Both the position numbers and the translations under genes were made by a program. A stretch of DNA of 64,000 nucleotides. Origin: Chrysemys picta bellii. Taxonomy: Eukaryota. The notes beneath the pieces are model-generated. The model was not told the origin of the DNA. It saw nothing but the letters and a program-made list of their open reading frames with translations, and made no database searches. This document shows, piece by piece, positions 13,601 to 22,756 of the stretch. The DNA lies in assembly GCF_011386835.1 (NCBI RefSeq), contig NC_088812.1, forward strand, positions 13,082,001-13,146,000. Direction: 5' to 3'. Every line of letters begins with the position of its first letter. Within the stretch, counting starts at the first letter, position 1.

Positions 13601-14655
13601 TCCCCGAGCCAGGGAGGGGACCCAGGAGTCCTGACGCCTAGGCCCCCCACCCCCTCCACTCTAGCCATTACATCCCACTGCCCTCCCCGAGCCAGGGAGG
13701 GGACCCAGGAGTCCTGACGACTAGGCCCCCCACCCCCTCCACTCTAGCCATTACATCCCACTGCCCTCCCCGAGCCAGGGAGGGGACCCAGGAGTCCTGA
13801 TGCTGCTGACTCCCCCCAAGACAGGCCCTTTCACAGACTCCACCACTGGTTGCCGTGGGGCTGTGGGGGGGCGACATGGCACGGAGGGGCCCGGGTGCTT
13901 GTTCCTCCCGCGCGGGGCCCATGGCGCGGGGCGCAGGCAGCCCCAGGTCCGGGCGGGGATGGGAACGACGGCTGTGCCCAGCATGGGGAGCAACTCACCG
14001 CTCTGGTCCCCGTGTCGCTGGAGACGGGGCGGGGGGCTGGGTCTGAGCCCCATAAACCAACCATCTATTCATGGGGGTGTTATGAGGACAGGACCCTTGC
14101 TCCCCCAGGATCTGGGGTCCCCCTCGCCCCCACTGTGGGGTCCTTTCCCAGCCCGTCTCCTGGTCCTACCCCAGCCCAACCCTGCCCCCCATGGGGAGCG
14201 TTGCACCCCCTCATCCCAGGCCCCTGAACCGCTACCCCAAGAGGCATCCCGGCCCCCCCAGCAACAAGGAGCCCCCCCATTCCCCTCCAGGTTACCGTGT
14301 TGAGTGCCAGGTTGCCGCGGATGGCGGCCGGCGTGAGCCCGTAGAGCACGGCCGCCCCGGCCACCCCGCCCAGCACTTGGGCCACCATGTAGAAGACGGC
14401 GCGGAGCAGGGAGAGCTGGGCGCCCACCAGGAAGGCGAAGGTGACGGCCGGGTTGACGTGGGCCCCGCTGACGTGGCCCAGCACCTGCACCAGGGTGGCT
14501 GCGGCCAGCCCAAAGGCCAGGGCCACCTGCAGCACGTTGAGGGGCCCAACTCCCCAGCGCAGCGAGGCCCCCAGCCCAAAGAAGACGTAGATCATGGTGG
14601 CGAAGAACTCGGCGAAGACGGCCCTCCAGAAGGAGGGGGAGCGCACCTCCCACAT
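10432..14655 (-). CDS. MIP: Lens fibre major intrinsic protein / aquaporin-0; join(complement 14296-14655, 11998-12162, 11446-11526, 10432-10617); 263 aa
   Basis: [20 protein letters not shown]...SGAHVNPA...[14 protein letters not shown]...[10 protein letters not shown]. Exon sizes 360/165/81/186 nt, all phase 0, GT-AG. Length and C-terminus ELKTQAL match mammalian MIP. Confidence 0.97.
10981..11283. repeat. 66-bp tandem repeat, about 4.6 copies, in MIP intron 3
   Basis: Units start at 10981, 11047, 11113, 11179 and 11245. Confidence 0.95.
11446..11526 (-). CDS. MIP: MIP exon 3 ([27 protein letters not shown], second NPA)
   Basis: Acceptor GCAG|ATA, donor TGG|GTAAGG, 81 nt. Confidence 0.96.
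11998..12162 (-). CDS. MIP: MIP exon 2 ([16 protein letters not shown]...LGHLFG)
   Basis: Acceptor CTGCAG|ATC, donor GGG|GTAACG, 165 nt. Confidence 0.96.
13590..13800. repeat. 83-bp tandem repeat of a SINE-head-like unit in MIP intron 1
   Basis: GAGCCAGGGAGGGGACCCAGGAGTCCTGA at 13606, 13689 and 13772. Confidence 0.85.
14296..14655 (-). CDS. MIP: MIP exon 1 (aa 1-120, first NPA)
   Basis: ATG at 14655, ends NLALNT then donor ACG|GTAACC. Confidence 0.96.
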
Positions 14656-16930: not shown

Positions 16931-18585
16931 TTGGCCCCTGCTCCGGTGCCAACTGGCATCCAAGACTCCCCGGCGATGGTTGTCATGGTGGCAGGGCTAG
17001 TTACCCCTCTGCTCCCCCCCCAGCGTCTGCCCTCAGGCCTTTACCCCCCCCGGCAGAACCCCCCAATTCTCCACTCCCAGACCAGGCCCTGGGGCTACGG
17101 CCCCAGGCAGATCCATCCTGCTTCCAGCTGGGCCCGGCCCCCGCGGCTCTCCGGGCCCTGACGCACAGACCAGGCAGCTCGTCTCCCAACGCCGGCTTTA
17201 ATCGGGGCAGCATGTGGGGGAAAAGGGGGTTAAACCCACCGACAGGCCACGCCCACGGCTGTCGTCCCTCGGACCCTGCCATGGCGCTCGTTCAGCAGGT
17301 GCCAGCCGGATTCCCCTGAGCGACGTGCCCGTTCCAGCCCCTGCCTCAGCCCCTCTGCCCTCCTGCATTCCCGGCCCCCTTCCTGCCCCAGGGGTTGCTG
17401 AGACGTGGGGTATCTTGAGCCCGCTTGTTTTCCCTGCCAGCCCCCCATTAAACTAACCCGGCCTGCCAGCCAGCCAGCCCTCTGCCCCACGGATCACGTC
17501 GCTCCAGGGGGGCCCAGGGGACGCTGAGAACGAGCAGCCGGCTGCAGCCAGAGCGGGGTGAGCCCCGCTCCCAAGTGGTGCCGCTGGCTTGTGGGGGCGA
17601 TCAGCAGTTCTGGGGGGGCCGCGTGCGAGAACCTGTAGCCAGGGCAGCGCGTGTCTGTGGGACAAGGGAGGGTCCAGACCTATGGGCAAACCCAGCCTGC
17701 GAAGGGGGGGGGCACGAAGCCAGAGGCCGTTTTGCCCTTGTTCTCGGTGGCTGTGGGGTCCGTGTGGCGCTCAGTGATCAGGCTGGCCCCAGCTGCTTTG
17801 GGGCCCCCTGTCTGGGGAGCCCCAACGCCCCACGGGGCTGTGGGAACAGCAATGGCGCAGGGACGTGGAGGGCCCGCAGGGTGCAGTGAACCAGGCCGGG
17901 CTACGCCACCCGCTGCTGCCCGCCTGGGAGCAAACCAGGAGCCTGCCAATAATTATCAACAGTCACAGGGGCCGGCGGGCTCCCAGCCAGCACCAGGGCG
18001 GTGGGCATGGACCGTGCCAGAGCTATCCTCACCCACAACGAACCCTGGCACGGTGCCAGCACTGCCGGAGTGTGCCTCGCACCCCCGCAGGAGTCAGGGG
18101 AGCGGCACTGCCATTTTGAGAGGGGGAAACTGAGGCACGGAAAGCGGGCAGTCACGCACTCAGTGAGTGGCATTGCTGCGGATAGAACCCAGGAGTCCTG
18201 GCTCCCAGCCCCACCCTGCTCTAACCACTAGACCCCACTCTCCTCCCTAAACCAGAGATAGAACCCAGGAGTCCTAGCACCCAGTCCCCCGTTCTATGCA
18301 CAGGCTACGCTGTCTGTCCAAAAGTGGTGGCCCTGTGTCCCTGAGCCCCAGGACTGAGCTGTGGCAGGTTCTGATCCGAAGTGGCCCTGGTCTTGCCCAT
18401 CCCCTGCCCCCACCGGTGGATGCTGGGTGCAGCTGGCACCAGATCTGGAGCAGCACTGGGGGTGGGGGTCGCTCAGTGGGGCTAGCAGGGGGGTGAGGGT
18501 GGGCTGGATCACGACAGTAGGGGGTGGCTCATGGAGGCTGGCAGGTCCTTGGGGGGCAGGACAGGGCAGGGGAGGCCGCACTGGC

Positions 18586-18801
18586 TCAGCGCTGCTCCCC
18601 CTTGGGGGGCGGCTTGGCCCGGGCGGCGTCCTGGGGGGCGGTGGAGAGGGAGGAGCGGGACACGCTGGCCGTCTCCACAATGTCGATGTCCCGGCAGGTC
18701 AGGCAGGCGACCAGCTTCTCCCGCGAAGCGCTGGAGGCGAAGAGAAACTCGTAGGAGAGGCCGGCCAGCACCGCGCCCAGCGAGGGGCCGATCCAGTACA
18801 C
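18586..18801 (-). CDS. AQP14: AQP14 exon 5 (TM6 and C-tail, stop TGA)
   Basis: CACAG|GTG TAC TGG ATC; VYWIGPSLGAVLAGLSYEFLFASSASREKLVACLTC... Confidence 0.92.
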   Translation of the reverse strand: MYWIGPSLGAVLAGLSYEFLFASSASREKLVACLTCRDIDIVETASVSRSSLSTAPQDAARAKPPPKGEQR

Positions 18802-21800
18802 CTGTGGGGGGGGGGTCAGGGGTCAGACAGGGCCCAGCGAGACCCCGTACACCTGGGTGGAGGGACAGGGGTCAGACAGGGCCCAGCGAGATCCCGTACA
18901 CCTGGGGGGGGGACAGGGGTCAGACAGGGCCCAGCGAGATCCTGTACACCTGGGGGGGGGACAGGGGTCAGACAGGGCCCAGCGAGATCCTGTACACCTG
19001 GGGGGGCGTCAGACAGGGCCCAGCGAGATCCCATACACCTGGGGGGGGGGAACAGGAGTCAGACAGGGCCCAGCGAGATCCAGTACACCTGGGGGGGGGG
19101 ACACAGGGGTCAGACAGGGCCCAGCGAGATCCCGTACACCTGGGGGGGGGACAGGGGTCAGACAGGGCCCACCGAGATCCCGTACACCTGGGGGGGGACA
19201 GGGGTCAGACAGGGCCCAGCGAGACCCCGTACACCTGGGGGGGGGGACAGGGGTCAGACAGGGCCCACCGAGATCCCGTACACCTGGGGGGGCGGGGACA
19301 GGGGTCAGACAGGGCTCAGCGAGATCCCGTACACCTGGGGGGGGACAGGGGTCAGACAGGGCCCACCGAGATCCCGTACACCTGGGGGGGGGGACAGGGG
19401 TCAGACAGGGCCCAGCGAGATCCCGTACACCTGCGGGGGGGGGCACAGGAGTCAGACAGGGCCCAGCGAGATCCCGTACACCTGGGGGGGCGGGGACAGG
19501 GGTCAGACAGGGCCCAGCGAGACCCCGTACACCTGGGGGGGGGGACAGGGGTCAGACAGGGCCCAGCGAGACCCCGTACACCTGGGGGGGGGGACACAGG
19601 GGTCAGACAGGGCCCAGCGAGACCCCGTACACCTGGGGGTGGGGACAGGGGTCAGACAGGGCCCAGCGAGATCCCGTACACCTCGGGGGGGGGCACGGGT
19701 CACCCTCCTCACATGCCCACTGCCGGATGCTCAGCTCCAGGTCATGGACCCAACATGGTCTTTGCTGGCTGGGTCAGCCCCCCCGCCCCCCTGTGCCCCC
19801 CCTGCGCACCCCAGCCTGGCTCACCCAGTGATGGTCCCAGATGCCCGTCAGGACGGCCGGGCCCAGCGATCTGGCTGGGTTCATGCTGCCCCCAGAGAAC
19901 GTCCCCTGCAGAGATGGGAGGGCAGGGGGGTGAGCGGACATTGCACGGGGATGGGGGGAGTCGGCCCCATGGAGCCATAGAGGGAGGGCAAGGCTGCGCC
20001 AGCGGGATCCCGGGGGGCCAGCCCCTCCCCCCGGGCCAGGCTCTGGGGGGCTGTTCCCCATCCGCCGGCCCAGCCTTGCCCTCCCTTGGGGCGGGGTGGG
20101 GGCGCCTCTTACCGCGGCCAGCGCTCCGGCCGTCACGGAGAAGCCAATGGCCAGGCCGCCCGGTTCGCCCGCCCCCCGGCGCCGCTGGTCCTCCACAGCG
20201 AAGATGGTGAAGACGAGCTGGAAGGTGGAGAAGGTCTCCATGGCGAGTGCCTGCCCAGCGTTGCCCTCGCTGCTCACCTGCGCCCAGGGACAAGACAAGC
20301 TCACACCTGGTCCTGGCCCGGCCCTCAGGCCACGTGGGCGGCAGGGAGAACCCGGGGCCCCTGGGCGCTCACCCCTGGGGGCATCAGGGGCTGTGTTGGT
20401 GTCTTGGTGACCCAGCAGCGAGAGGTCTGGGGGGGGTTCCCTCTGGGCTGGGGGGACAGTGAAGGGGGATCAAATCCGGGGCCCAGTCAAGGCGGGATCC
20501 CTGCTCCTTGGGCATGGGAAGGTGGGAGTCTGACGGGTGGCCCTGTCCACAGGGCCGGGGGGCGACACTTCCACTGGGGAGAGGGGTGGCACTGCCAATG
20601 GGTGCTGGGGTTTCAGGGCAGCACTGCCAATGGGGCACTGGGGGTTCAGGATGGCACTGCCAAAGGGGTGAAGGGGGCTCAGGGTGGCACTGCCAGTGGG
20701 GCTGGGGGGTCAGGGTGGCACTGCCAATGAGGCACTGGGGTTCAGGGTGGCACTGCCAATGGGGTGAAGGGGGGGTCAGGGTGGCACTGCCAATGAGGCA
20801 CTGGGGTTCAGGGTGGCACTGCCAATGGGGTGAAGGGGGGGTCAGGGTGGCACTGCCAATGGGGCACTGGGGGTTCAGGGTGGCACTGCCAATGGGGTGA
20901 AGGGGGGGTCAGGATGGCACTGCCAATGGGGCACTGGGGGTTCAGGGTGGCACTGCCAATGGGGTGAAGGGGGTCAGGGTGGCACTGCCAATGGGGGTTT
21001 CAGTGTGGCACTGCCAATGGGGGGCCGGGGCGGCAGTGCTGTCCCCCCAGAAGGCAGGTGCACCCTGTATCGGTAGCCAGGGCACACACGTCTGTCGGGC
21101 CACCCCAGGGCCCGGTTACCCAGCCCCTCCCAACGCCCACGGGCCCCAGGCAGACGCCGGGGAGCCCAGGGCCCGAGGGGCAGCTGGGGCGGGGTCCCCA
21201 GCGACCCAGCTCAGACACTCACCCTGGTGACGAGGTGGCTGGCGGCTGCCACGGGCAGCGCCAGGTAGACGGCGGCCGAGGCCAGGATGGCGCCCAGGCA
21301 CTGGGCCAGGACATAGGCGGCTCCGCGCAGGGCGTCCAGCTTGCGGGTGCAGAGGAAGGCCAGGGTGAGCGCCGGGTTGGCCTGGGCCCCGCTGACCTCG
21401 CCGAAGCAGTGAGCCAGCCCCACGGCCGCCATCCCGGCCGTCAGAGCCGGCTGCAGGGCGGGTGGGGCTGTGACGCGCCCGGGGCCGTCGGGGCACGAGG
21501 CCCCCAGCACCAGCCAGACGAAGATCAGGGTGCCAACCACCTCCGCCAGCAGGGAGCGCCAGAACCGCCGGCTCCGCAGCTCCTGCGGGGGGGGGGGGGG
21601 GGGGGCGACAGTCAGCAACCAAGTGGGGGGGAACCATGGCAACAGATTTGGGGGTGTCTGGTCTCATAGCAACGGGCGGGGGGTCTGGAACCATGGCTGC
21701 AGAGGGGACACTGTGGGGAGGGGAGGTCACAGGGCAGGTAGGTGAATATGGACGGACAGAGGGACATGGGCGGGTGGGTGCATATGGATGGACCGACAGA

Positions 21801-22756
21801 CACGGGTGGGTGGATATGGACAGATGGACGGATGTGGGTGGGTGGATATGGACGGACGGACGGATGGACACAGGTGGGTGGATGGATATGGACAGATGGA
21901 TGGACACGGGCGGGTGGGTGGATATGGACGGACGGGCGGATGGACAGGTGGATGGGTGGATATGGATGGATGGACAGGGGGACATGGGCGGGTGGGTGGA
22001 TATGGACAGATGGATGGGCACGGGCGGGTGGGTGGATATGGACGGATGGACACAGGTGGGTGGATGGATATGGACAGATGCATGGACACGGGCGGGTGGG
22101 TGGATATGGACAGACGGGCGGATGGACAGGTGGATGGGTGGATATGGACGGATGGACAGAGGGGCACGGGCGGGTGGGTAGATATGGATGGATGGACATG
22201 GGTGGGCGGGGTGGACATGGATGGACAGATGGACACGGGCGGGTGGATATGGACGGATGGGTGGATGGGTGGATATGGATGGATGGATGGACGGACGGGT
22301 GGGTGGGTGGACATGGATGGACGGGCAGATGGGTGGATATGGACAGATGGACACGGGCGGGTGGACATGGACGGACGGGCGGATGGGTGGATATGGATGG
22401 ATGGACACGGGCAGGTGGGTGGATATGGACGGACGGACACGGGCAGGTGGGTGGATATGGACGGATGGGCGGACGGATGGGTGGATATGGACGGACAGGA
22501 GGGTGGGTGGATATGGATGGATGGGTGGATATGGACGGACGGATGGACGGGGGGGTGGGTGGATATGGATGGACGGGCGGGTGGGTGGATATGGATGGAC
22601 GGATGGACACGGGCTGGTGGACATGGACGGACGGATGGGCAGGGAGTACAGAGAAGTTCTCCCAGACGTCCCAGGTGCCCCATAGCCAGGGCTCAGCTGC
22701 CCACTGGGTGCTGGGGTGCGGGCGAGGTGGGCAGCCCTTACCTCGCCGATGGCCAT
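18586..22756 (-). CDS. AQP14: Aquaporin-14 (AQP14-type classical aquaporin); join(complement 22742-22756, 21223-21582, 20113-20277, 19825-19905, 18586-18801); 278 aa
   Basis: MAIGE|ELRSRRFWRSLLAEVVG...SGAQANPA...SGGSMNPARSLGPA...SREKLVACLTCRDIDIVETASVSRSSLS. Two NPA motifs, small residues at the ar/R filter, an extra micro first exon, and a tandem position next to MIP. These match the AQP14 subfamily as I recall it. No database search was run. Confidence 0.88.
18805..19695. repeat. About 49-bp tandem repeat, 18 copies, in the last AQP14 intron, copied from the intron/exon-5 junction
   Basis: Unit GGGGTCAGACAGGGCCCAGCGAGATCCCGTACACCTG(G)n. Confidence 0.95.
19825..19905 (-). CDS. AQP14: AQP14 exon 4 (GTFSGGSMNPARSLGPAVLTGIWDHHW, 81 nt)
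   Basis: TGCAG|GGG acceptor, TGG|GTGAGC donor. Confidence 0.94.
20113..20277 (-). CDS. AQP14: AQP14 exon 3 (VSSEGNAGQALAMETF...AGALAA, 165 nt)
   Basis: GCAG|GTG acceptor, GCG|GTAAGA donor. Confidence 0.93.
20570..21025. repeat. Minisatellite (GGGTGGCACTGCCAATGGGG core) in AQP14 intron 2
   Basis: Direct reading; about 30-bp period. Confidence 0.9.
21223..21582 (-). CDS. AQP14: AQP14 exon 2 (360 nt, first NPA)
   Basis: Poly-C tract then GCAG|GAG; ends HLVTR, donor AGG|GTGAGT. Confidence 0.93.
21740..22640. repeat. GGAT/GGAC/GGGT compound low-complexity repeat filling AQP14 intron 1
   Basis: GGATATGGACGGATGGACACGGGCGGGTGGGT variants. Confidence 0.95.
22742..22756 (-). CDS. AQP14: AQP14 coding exon 1 (MAIGE, 15 nt)
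   Basis: AGC ATG GCC ATC GGC GAG|GTAAGG; strong donor; joins in phase 0 to exon 2, which has no Met of its own. Confidence 0.8.

What the first reader, a model, noticed from the sequence alone, without database searches (positions are those of the whole stretch)
18790..19700. An intronic minisatellite built from the gene's own 3' splice site: about 18 decoy acceptors in front of the AQP14 last exon
On the transcript strand the true junction reads CTGTCTGACCCCTGA(C)n-ACAG|GTG TAC TGG ATC GGC CCC TCG CTG GGC. Each upstream repeat unit reads CTGTCTGACCCCTGT(C)n-CAG|GTG TAC GGG ATC TCG CTG GGC CCT GTC TGA. So each unit has a CTGAC branch-point-like motif, a C tract, CAG, and a near copy of the first exon codons. 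I count 17 CAG|GTGTA copies plus one GAG variant, all 5' of the real site; the copy at about 19084 even keeps TAC TGG ATC. Use of any decoy gives VYG(I/V)S(L/V)GPV-stop in frame, removing most of TM6 and the whole C-tail. Because this is the terminal exon, such transcripts should escape NMD (inference). Copy-number variation could tune the amount of functional AQP14, or the array could mark a gene in decay. I know of no description of this at this locus.
Basis: partly seen in the sequence, partly recalled or inferred. Interest (0 to 1): 0.8.

Follow-up and report, generated by a model that had tools for sequence, protein, structure and literature searches.

The report
Splice-acceptor minisatellite in turtle AQP14
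The last intron of a turtle aquaporin-14 gene holds 18 tandem near-copies of the gene's own intron-end/exon-start junction, yet assembled transcripts join only to the last, genuine copy; the array is old, varies in copy number, is probably near-neutral, and mirrors on the acceptor side the donor-side repeats known in human F7 and CBS.

Summary
A 49-base unit repeated 18.7 times (18790-19702) fills intron 4 of an intact five-exon AQP14 gene on the minus strand. There are 17 CAG|GTGTA decoys, one GAG variant and then the true acceptor (exon 5 starts at 18801). Every decoy would give a 216-aa product that stops after nine codons, against 278 aa normally.

Contigs from four RNA-like runs (three turtle species, three studies) all join 19825 to 18801, and none covers the array. 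The true site therefore dominates, and the gene is expressed and conserved, not decaying.

The array is not private to this genome. All 11 turtle species examined carry it, in both suborders, with 2 to 18 units. Copy number also differs among Caretta assemblies. A lizard lacks it. One NCBI isoform (Mauremys reevesii X4) ends exactly in the predicted decoy tail, so low-level decoy use is plausible.

Units evolve no more slowly than the flanking intron, and two other AQP14 intron minisatellites are also shared among turtles. Persistence therefore does not imply function.

The closest known cases are the donor-side boundary-spanning minisatellites of F7, CBS and IFI6. First-reader notes of this scan report similar acceptor arrays at RNF40, PPP6R1 and RMND5B in this genome; I did not check them.

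The parts
18790..19702 (-). Minisatellite of 18 upstream units of 41-51 nt. Each unit holds the first ~21 nt of exon 5 (with a 6-nt deletion), an in-frame TGA, a CTGAC branch-point-like motif, a C8-C12 tract and AG. The 3' end of the array runs into the true junction.
   Evidence: TRF; unit listing
18852..19681 (-). The 18 decoy acceptors. First exon-like bases are at 19681 (GAG), 19632, 19581, 19532, 19481, 19430, 19381, 19334, 19283, 19234, 19187, 19139, 19088, 19038, 18997, 18949, 18901 and 18852.
   Evidence: Regex listing; translation of each decoy product to 216 aa
18802..18831 (-). True 3' splice site: two CTGAC motifs (nearer A is 15 nt from the exon), a C-rich tract, then ACAG.
   Evidence: Sequence; RNA contig junction 19825 to 18801 in 4 runs
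18586..18801 (-). AQP14 exon 5 (terminal coding exon): TM6 plus the cytoplasmic tail, with its stop codon at 18586-18588.
   Evidence: aligns to AQP4 IYWVGPIIGAVLAG...; contigs continue downstream without further splicing
19825..19905 (-). AQP14 exon 4 (81 nt, second NPA motif), with donor TGG|GTGAGC.
19703..19824 (-). Unique 5' part of intron 4. It is conserved at 75-98% across turtles and serves as the neutral baseline.
20113..20277 (-). AQP14 exon 3.
21223..21582 (-). AQP14 exon 2 (first NPA motif). Its acceptor carries a 19-C run.
22742..22756 (-). AQP14 exon 1 (15 nt, MAIGE) with donor GAG|GTAAGG. Read from sequence only; no RNA junction was checked.
   Evidence: PMC6906440 says exon 1 encodes 3-7 residues
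10555..14649 (-). Downstream aquaporin gene with an AQP0/MIP-like sequence. This is the synteny expected for AQP14.
   Evidence: tblastn; PMC6906440

Best explanation
This is a boundary-spanning minisatellite. A tandem duplication across the intron-4/exon-5 junction of AQP14 arose in an early turtle and has since expanded, contracted and partly homogenised. Intron 4 in this emydid turtle (probably Chrysemys picta) now holds 18 self-contained branch-point / C-tract / AG modules ahead of the real one. The spliceosome uses the 3'-most module, the only one contiguous with the real exon body.

I infer that this choice comes from exon definition. Pure-C tracts make weak, AG-dependent acceptors that need enhancers in the downstream exon. 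In contrast, each decoy is followed after 21 nt by the next unit's branch-point and C-tract module. The decoys would then be latent pseudo-acceptors used rarely, most likely those nearest the exon, giving a truncated 216-aa product that should escape NMD.

The array itself is near-neutral, or at most slightly deleterious. It is the acceptor-side mirror of the donor-side minisatellites of human F7, CBS and IFI6.

Shown: the structure, the dominant junction, the distribution across turtles and the copy-number variation. Inferred: exon definition as the reason for site choice, neutrality, and the rarity of decoy use.
For: - Structure.
- Dominant use of the true site: contigs of X15 and X16 (same species, 0 mismatches), X25 and X26 (two related species, about 2% different) all skip 1023 nt with GT..AG ends and continue into the GGCCCC-containing true exon start. 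Depth is zero over 18822-19759.
- Ancient and variable: the array is present in Malaclemys (6 units), Emys (14), Mauremys mutica (11), M. reevesii (5), Chelonoidis (4), Caretta (7 or 10 depending on assembly), Lepidochelys kempii (14), Dermochelys (4), Carettochelys (9) and Emydura (2). It is absent in the lizard Sceloporus.
- No extra constraint: unit identity between species (0.73-0.91) is equal to or lower than that of the unique part of the same intron (0.75-0.98).
- AG status: AG is intact in 46 of 54 emydid and geoemydid units against 0.96 expected, so if anything AG is lost in excess.
- Control: two other AQP14 intron minisatellites are also shared among turtles.
- The array is unique to this locus in the genome.
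- The gene is under constraint: 241-270 of 278 residues are identical among turtles.
- Precedent: in F7, LMNB2 and PDGF only the authentic, exon-adjacent site is used. In CBS and IFI6 the authentic site plus the two nearest pseudo-sites are used (PMC1557585).
- Low-level decoy use is plausible: M. reevesii isoform X4 ends ...DHHWVYGISLGPV.
Against: - Logan contigs show only the dominant form, and depth in the window's own species is just 2.8-4.5, so a decoy share of perhaps 10-30% cannot be excluded.
- Tissue and condition of the runs are unknown.
- In this species all 18 decoys keep an AG, whereas relatives have lost some. This could be recent expansion of an AG-bearing unit, or it could be retention.
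- By sequence the decoys are not weaker than the true site. The core CAG|GTGTAC is identical, and in M. mutica one decoy is identical to the true site from -20 to +6.
- Predicted RNA accessibility does not differ between true and decoy sites. The proposed reason for site choice (exon definition) is therefore untested inference.
- Presence in every turtle examined could also reflect function.
Confidence: 0.7

Rival explanations
1. Regulated decoy use. The array is a selected device in which some tissues or conditions splice to decoys. This would produce a TM6-less, tail-less AQP14 or simply lower functional output, with copy number acting as a dial.
For: All 18 decoys in this species keep AG, C-tract and the in-frame TGA, and all but the first keep the branch-point motif. 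The array is retained in all 11 turtle species examined. An NCBI isoform with exactly the decoy tail exists in M. reevesii. The PTC lies in the last exon, so the product should escape EJC-dependent NMD (established rule).
Against: No decoy junction and no array coverage appear in four RNA-like runs from three species. Units are no better conserved than neutral intron, and AGs are lost freely in relatives: Carettochelys keeps 2 of 9 and M. mutica 6 of 11. Copy number ranges from 2 to 18 with no sign of a set point. Other minisatellites in the same gene persist equally.
Confidence: 0.12
2. Splicing sink or intron detention. The decoys bind U2AF, U2 or poly(C)-binding proteins non-productively and slow removal of intron 4, as proposed for 'decoy exons'. 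Copy number would then lower or delay AQP14 expression without making a truncated protein.
For: There are nineteen tandem 3' splice-site modules and C8-C12 tracts every ~49 nt, which are good PCBP/hnRNP K motifs by general knowledge.
Against: No intron-4 coverage appears in any RNA contig, including the run at depth 31.5. There is no conservation signal. Contigs are insensitive to low-level retained introns, so this is weakly tested.
Confidence: 0.08
3. The array marks a gene in decay (relaxed selection on AQP14 in turtles).
For: A large repeat load in three of the gene's four introns. Exon-skipping isoforms are annotated in relatives.
Against: The 278-codon ORF is intact with both NPA motifs. 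All splice sites are canonical. 241-270 of 278 residues are identical across turtles that share the array. The gene is expressed and correctly spliced.
Confidence: 0.02
4. Assembly artefact: the array or its length was produced by mis-assembly of a GC-rich repeat.
For: GC-rich homopolymer-bearing repeats are error-prone, and the copy number in this assembly was not checked against long reads.
Against: Independent assemblies of 10 other turtle species all have the array at the same place. 74-83% of sampled words of a stretch that is half array are present in runs of three studies. The skipped length of 1023 nt lies within the 253-1023 nt span of intron lengths seen across turtles, at its top.
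Confidence: 0.03

Closest known systems
Human F7 IVS7 37-bp VNTR (Borensztajn et al. 2006, PMC1557585)
   Same: A minisatellite whose terminal monomer spans an exon-intron boundary, so the authentic splice site is reiterated five to nine times in the intron. The pseudo-sites are identical and competent, but only the exon-adjacent authentic site is used. Copy number is polymorphic.
   Different: F7 reiterates the donor (5' splice site) downstream of the exon, and the chosen site is the most upstream. Here the acceptor, with branch point and pyrimidine tract, is reiterated upstream of the exon and the chosen site is the most downstream. A 5'-to-3' scanning rule cannot explain both, whereas 'the site contiguous with the exon wins' can. 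There are 18 copies here, and the array is shared by an entire reptile order.
Human CBS IVS13 31-bp VNTR and the IFI6 (6-16) intron 2 minisatellite (as summarised in PMC1557585)
   Same: Boundary-spanning arrays with 15-25 pseudo-sites. The authentic site dominates, and the one or two nearest pseudo-sites are used at low level. This is the pattern I predict here, and the M. reevesii X4 isoform hints at it.
   Different: Both are donor-side, human-specific or primate-level polymorphisms. Here the array is acceptor-side and the decoy products end in a terminal-exon stop.
NAGNAG and other tandem acceptors
   Same: More than one usable AG at a 3' splice site.
   Different: NAGNAG sites are 3 nt apart and share one branch point and tract. 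Here each of the 19 sites, spaced about 49 nt apart, has its own C-tract and AG, and every unit after the first also has its own branch-point motif.
Decoy exons and recursive splice sites
   Same: Intronic splice-site-like elements that engage the spliceosome without appearing in mRNA.
   Different: No intron retention was seen. The 5' site that would be regenerated after decoy use (TGG|GTGTAC) lacks the +4A and +5G that all four real donors of this gene have, so recursive re-splicing is unlikely.

Membership tests
Boundary-spanning splice-site minisatellite (F7/CBS/IFI6 type) | Tandem array of 10-100-bp units inside an intron | tested here: met
   Period 49, 18.7 copies, 90% matches
Boundary-spanning splice-site minisatellite (F7/CBS/IFI6 type) | The terminal monomer spans the exon-intron boundary, so the authentic splice site belongs to the array | tested here: met
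   The last unit runs into exon 5. TRF extends to 18790, 12 nt inside the exon. It is on the acceptor side, not the donor side as in the described cases.
Boundary-spanning splice-site minisatellite (F7/CBS/IFI6 type) | Pseudo-sites identical or nearly identical to the authentic site | tested here: met
   The CAG|GTGTAC core is identical in 16 decoys, one more has CAG|GTGTAT and one has GAG. CTGAC plus a C-tract is present in every unit after the first.
Boundary-spanning splice-site minisatellite (F7/CBS/IFI6 type) | The authentic exon-adjacent site is used, and pseudo-sites are silent or minor | tested here: met
   Only the 19825-to-18801 junction appears in contigs of 4 runs. The minor-isoform level is not measurable from contigs.
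Boundary-spanning splice-site minisatellite (F7/CBS/IFI6 type) | Copy-number polymorphism | tested here: inconclusive
   Units range from 2 to 18 between species, and 7 versus 10 among four Caretta caretta assemblies. Within the window's own species this was not tested.
AQP14 subfamily of aquaporins | MIP fold with two NPA motifs | tested here: met
   Pfam MIP at E 3e-23 and 2.5e-17. NPA is present in exon 2 and exon 4.
AQP14 subfamily of aquaporins | Five exons in sarcopterygians, with exon 1 encoding 3-7 residues | tested here: met
   Exons of 15, 360, 165, 81 and 216 nt with canonical sites. The rule is from PMC6906440.
AQP14 subfamily of aquaporins | Lies directly upstream of AQP0 | tested here: met
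   An AQP0-like gene lies at 10555-14649 on the same strand.
AQP14 subfamily of aquaporins | Orthology to proteins named Aquaporin 14 | tested here: met
   275 of 278 residues are identical to the Chrysemys picta bellii 'Aquaporin 14' entry. Best hits are AQP14 of turtles, lizards, amphibians and fishes.
Recursive splice site | A 3' site directly followed by a sequence that regenerates a competent 5' splice site | tested here: not met
   GTGTAC mismatches the consensus at +4, +5 and +6. All real donors of the gene have +4A and +5G.
Decoy exon / intron detention element | The host intron is retained in a fraction of transcripts | tested here: inconclusive
   Zero contig coverage of intron 4, but contigs drop rare forms.

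The most novel reading that the evidence does not exclude
The array is a selected, order-wide feature of turtle AQP14. It would be a heritable copy-number rheostat in which competing acceptors divert or delay splicing, setting how much full-length channel is made. Such a device would have been retained since the common ancestor of living turtles.
Probability: 0.08. Interest if true: 0.7.

Novelty: new variant of a known kind. Interest (0 to 1): 0.45.

Why it matters
Donor-side boundary-spanning minisatellites, F7 above all, have served as natural test beds for how a splice site is picked among identical competitors. In the paper library I found no described acceptor-side counterpart.

This locus offers one: 19 branch-point / tract / AG modules, with the last one chosen. 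That outcome contradicts a simple 'first site transcribed wins' or 5'-to-3' scanning rule and fits exon definition. Natural alleles with 2 to 18 units across turtles are available as ready-made variants.

There is also a practical point. The array misleads gene predictors. It yields a 310-aa Lepidochelys kempii model that reads through repeat units and a truncated M. reevesii isoform, so turtle AQP14 annotations need care.

For aquaporin biology the consequence is probably small.

Tried and rejected
- RNA structure as the reason the decoys are silent. The partition-function fold of exon 4 through exon 5 gives the same unpaired probabilities for AG, tract and branch point at the true site (0.44, 0.65, 0.50) as at the decoys. 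Rejected.
- Recursive splicing that would rescue decoy use. The regenerated donor GTGTAC is poor. Rejected.
- Dispersed repeat family. The own-genome search found only this locus plus weak 67-70% matches on another contig. Rejected.
- Extra conservation of the units. None was found relative to the unique part of the intron.
- Archosaur outgroup. No bird or crocodilian AQP14 appeared among the listed hits of two protein searches. The origin can therefore only be placed after the split from lepidosaurs.
- Locus look-up for the truncated M. reevesii isoform itself failed, because only the longest product is indexed. I used isoform X1 instead. Which decoy X4 uses cannot be told.
- Checking the scan's note on an RMND5B acceptor array via Pfam CTLH in the own genome. 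The search gave several candidate genes, and I did not pursue it further.
- Paper searches for an acceptor-side boundary minisatellite found none. One search failed on a syntax error.
- No quantitative 3' splice-site score (MaxEntScan) could be run offline. The comparison rests on direct sequence identity.
Full report
**Observation**

Tandem Repeats Finder reports a single array at 18790-19702 with period 49, 18.7 copies, 90% matches and score 1443. On the minus strand each unit has five parts:
- about 21 nt that copy the start of the last coding exon, minus six bases;
- an in-frame TGA;
- a CTGAC motif;
- a run of 8-12 C;
- AG.

A listing of every [CG]AG|GTGTA gives 17 CAG decoys and one GAG decoy, followed by the true junction whose exon starts at 18801. 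The structure is as described and is far beyond chance.

**The gene**

The minus strand carries five exons with canonical GT..AG introns:

| Exon | Coordinates | Length (nt) |
|---|---|---|
| 1 | 22756-22742 | 15 |
| 2 | 21582-21223 | 360 |
| 3 | 20277-20113 | 165 |
| 4 | 19905-19825 | 81 |
| 5 | 18801-18586 | 216 |

Together they give a 278-aa protein with both NPA motifs and Pfam MIP matches. Four lines of evidence identify it as AQP14:
- Exon 3 is 100% identical to entries that sources name 'Aquaporin 14' or 'aquaporin-4-like' in emydid turtles.
- The whole protein matches the Chrysemys picta bellii AQP14 entry at 275 of 278 residues. It contains exactly the 223-aa model shared by Malaclemys and C. 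picta bellii.
- An AQP0-like gene lies just downstream on the same strand, at 10555-14649.
- Five exons, a tiny first exon and a position upstream of AQP0 are the published hallmarks of AQP14 (PMC6906440).

The window is therefore from an emydid turtle, probably the painted turtle. That species assignment is an inference.

**What the decoys would do**

Joined to the exon-4 donor, every decoy reads nine codons, VY(G/W/R)(I/V)S(L/V)(G/S)PV, and then stops. The product is 216 aa instead of 278. The lost part begins with the stretch that aligns to AQP4 IYWVGPIIGAVLAG..., which is helix 6, and includes the whole tail. Because the stop lies in the terminal exon, escape from EJC-dependent NMD follows from the established rule. 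This is inference.

**What is actually spliced**

My one read-laying run placed Logan contigs of four RNA-like runs on 18420-20420.
- Two runs carry the window's species label and have zero mismatches.
- Two runs are from related species that differ by about 2%.
- All four show one junction that skips 1023 nt with GT..AG ends, from 19825 to 18801. The contigs continue into the true exon start, including the six bases that the decoys lack.
- The exon 3-exon 4 junction is seen in two of the runs.
- No contig touches 18822-19759.

The authentic, 3'-most acceptor is therefore the dominant one. There are two limits. Contigs drop rare variants, and depth in the window's own species is only 2.8-4.5, so a minor decoy share is not excluded.

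**The array in other turtles**

I fetched the orthologous gene from other genomes and parsed the last intron.

| Species | Units | Last intron (nt) |
|---|---|---|
| Window | 18 | 1023 |
| Emys orbicularis | 14 | 847 |
| Malaclemys | 6 | 433 |
| Mauremys mutica | 11 | 727 |
| Mauremys reevesii | 5 | 410 |
| Chelonoidis | 4 | 374 |
| Caretta caretta (four assemblies) | 7 or 10 | 489 or 617 |
| Lepidochelys kempii | 14 | 792 |
| Dermochelys | 4 | 344 |
| Carettochelys | 9 | 605 |
| Emydura (pleurodire) | 2 | 253 |
| Sceloporus (lizard) | 0 | 435 |

- Every turtle has the repeat. The lizard has none and instead has an ordinary T-rich acceptor.
- The 5'-most unit of sea turtles and of Emydura still carries the six bases that later units lack.
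- Emydura also has a unit of the deleted type.
- Both unit types therefore predate the split of the two living turtle suborders, roughly 200 million years ago by published timetrees (my knowledge).
- I could not obtain an archosaur orthologue, so the origin is dated only as after the split from lepidosaurs.

Copy number turns over fast. Malaclemys has 6 units and the window has 18, although the unique part of the intron is 98% identical between them.

**Function or neutral repeat?**

Four results point to neutrality.
1. Unit identity between species (0.73-0.91) is no higher than that of the unique 5' part of the same intron (0.75-0.98).
2. Decoy AGs are freely lost in relatives.
   - Carettochelys keeps 2 of 9, M. 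mutica 6 of 11 and Malaclemys 4 of 6.
   - Among emydid and geoemydid units, 46 of 54 keep AG, against 0.96 expected from the per-site conservation of the rest of the unit.
   - This excess loss is mild. The events are not independent and they sit next to a hypermutable C run.
3. The two other minisatellites in AQP14 introns are also shared among turtles. The intron 1 array is in all of them, and the intron 2 array is in the testudinoids. Long persistence is therefore the local norm, not a mark of function.
4. The gene is well conserved, with 241-270 of 278 residues identical among turtles. This rules out 'a gene in decay'.

Two facts point the other way. All 18 decoys in this species are intact, and no turtle examined lacks the array entirely.

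**Evidence that decoys can be used**

NCBI's Mauremys reevesii isoform X4 (259 aa) ends ...DHHWVYGISLGPV, which is exactly the predicted decoy product. All five decoys in that species are intact. To my knowledge Gnomon isoforms normally rest on transcript evidence, but I could not inspect it.

The 310-aa Lepidochelys kempii model starts at a decoy, reads through in-frame 36-nt units, and leaves through a poor GTCTGA donor. A second annotation of the same contig gives the normal 278 aa. I treat the 310-aa model as a likely prediction artefact.

**Why the last site wins**

The sequences do not explain it.
- The core CAG|GTGTAC is identical at the true site and at the decoys.
- In M. mutica one decoy matches the true site from -20 to +6.
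- Predicted accessibility is the same at true and decoy sites.
- Recursive re-splicing is unlikely, because the regenerated donor is poor.

What differs is the downstream context. Only the last site is followed by the real exon, whereas each decoy is followed after 21 nt by the next unit's branch-point and C-tract module.

I therefore infer exon definition. By established knowledge of enhancer-dependent 3' sites, pure-C tracts bind U2AF65 poorly, so such acceptors depend on exonic enhancers whose effect falls with distance. This predicts that any residual decoy use is concentrated on the units nearest the exon. That would mirror CBS and IFI6, where the two pseudo-donors nearest the exon are used (PMC1557585).

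The whole array is about 1 kb. Transcription order therefore gives the upstream sites a head start of only seconds (inference).

**Comparison with known cases**

Borensztajn et al. list minisatellites whose first monomer spans an exon-intron boundary and reiterates the donor: F7, IFI6, CBS, LMNB2 and PDGF. The turtle AQP14 array meets the same definition on the acceptor side. Two library searches found no described acceptor-side case, which is not proof that none exists.

First-reader notes of this scan report similar acceptor-multiplying minisatellites at RNF40, PPP6R1 and RMND5B in the same genome. I did not verify them. If they are real, they argue for a general mutational tendency of this GC-rich, minisatellite-prone genome and not for an AQP14-specific device.

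**Verdict**

The feature is real, old, variable in copy number and most likely near-neutral. It has value as a natural model of 3' splice-site choice and as a warning for annotation. It is a new variant of a known kind, and I score its interest at 0.45.

Noticed in passing
window 20584-20996 (intron 2) and 21737-22600 (intron 1), minus strand gene: There are two further minisatellites in AQP14 introns. One has a 33/66-nt unit (CCCCATTGGCAGTGCCACCCTGA...). The other has a 26-182-nt unit (TCCATCCATATCCACCCACCC...). Both recur in other turtles. The intron-1 array creates a spurious 686-aa open frame.
   Followed up: partly
window 10555-14649, minus strand: An AQP0/MIP-like four-exon gene lies directly downstream of AQP14, which is the expected synteny.
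   Followed up: partly
P0001 (Malaclemys X2), P0066 (M. reevesii X2), P0067 (M. mutica X2): Annotated in-frame exon-skipping isoforms of turtle AQP14. Exon 4 (second NPA) is skipped in two species and exon 3 in one. All would be non-functional channels.
   Followed up: no
L011 (Lepidochelys kempii), last intron; P0005: Sea-turtle arrays have a higher-order structure with units of 36, 47 and 54 nt. The 36-nt units lack the TGA and are in frame. A RefSeq model therefore reads 32 extra residues through them.
   Followed up: partly
window 21583-21610, minus strand: The native acceptor of exon 2 has a run of 19 C before GCAG, and the true exon-5 acceptor likewise has a run of about 10 C. The exon 3 and exon 4 acceptors are mixed C/T. 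Long pure-C tracts are therefore not peculiar to the decoys.
   Followed up: no
window 18790-19702, plus strand: The template strand of the array has G10, G4 and G3 runs in every unit. This is G-quadruplex-prone, like the unstable human minisatellite CEB1 (my knowledge), and may explain the fast copy-number turnover.
   Followed up: no
L017-L019 (G000 contig C12, about 1.757 and 1.787 Mb): Weak (67-70%) matches to the array on another contig, probably unrelated GC-rich minisatellites.
   Followed up: no
L003 versus L004-L006 (Caretta caretta assemblies): The last intron is 617 nt in one assembly and 489 nt in three others. The three also differ by point changes at a decoy junction (GTGTAC versus GAGTAC). 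This indicates allelic variation within the species.
   Followed up: partly
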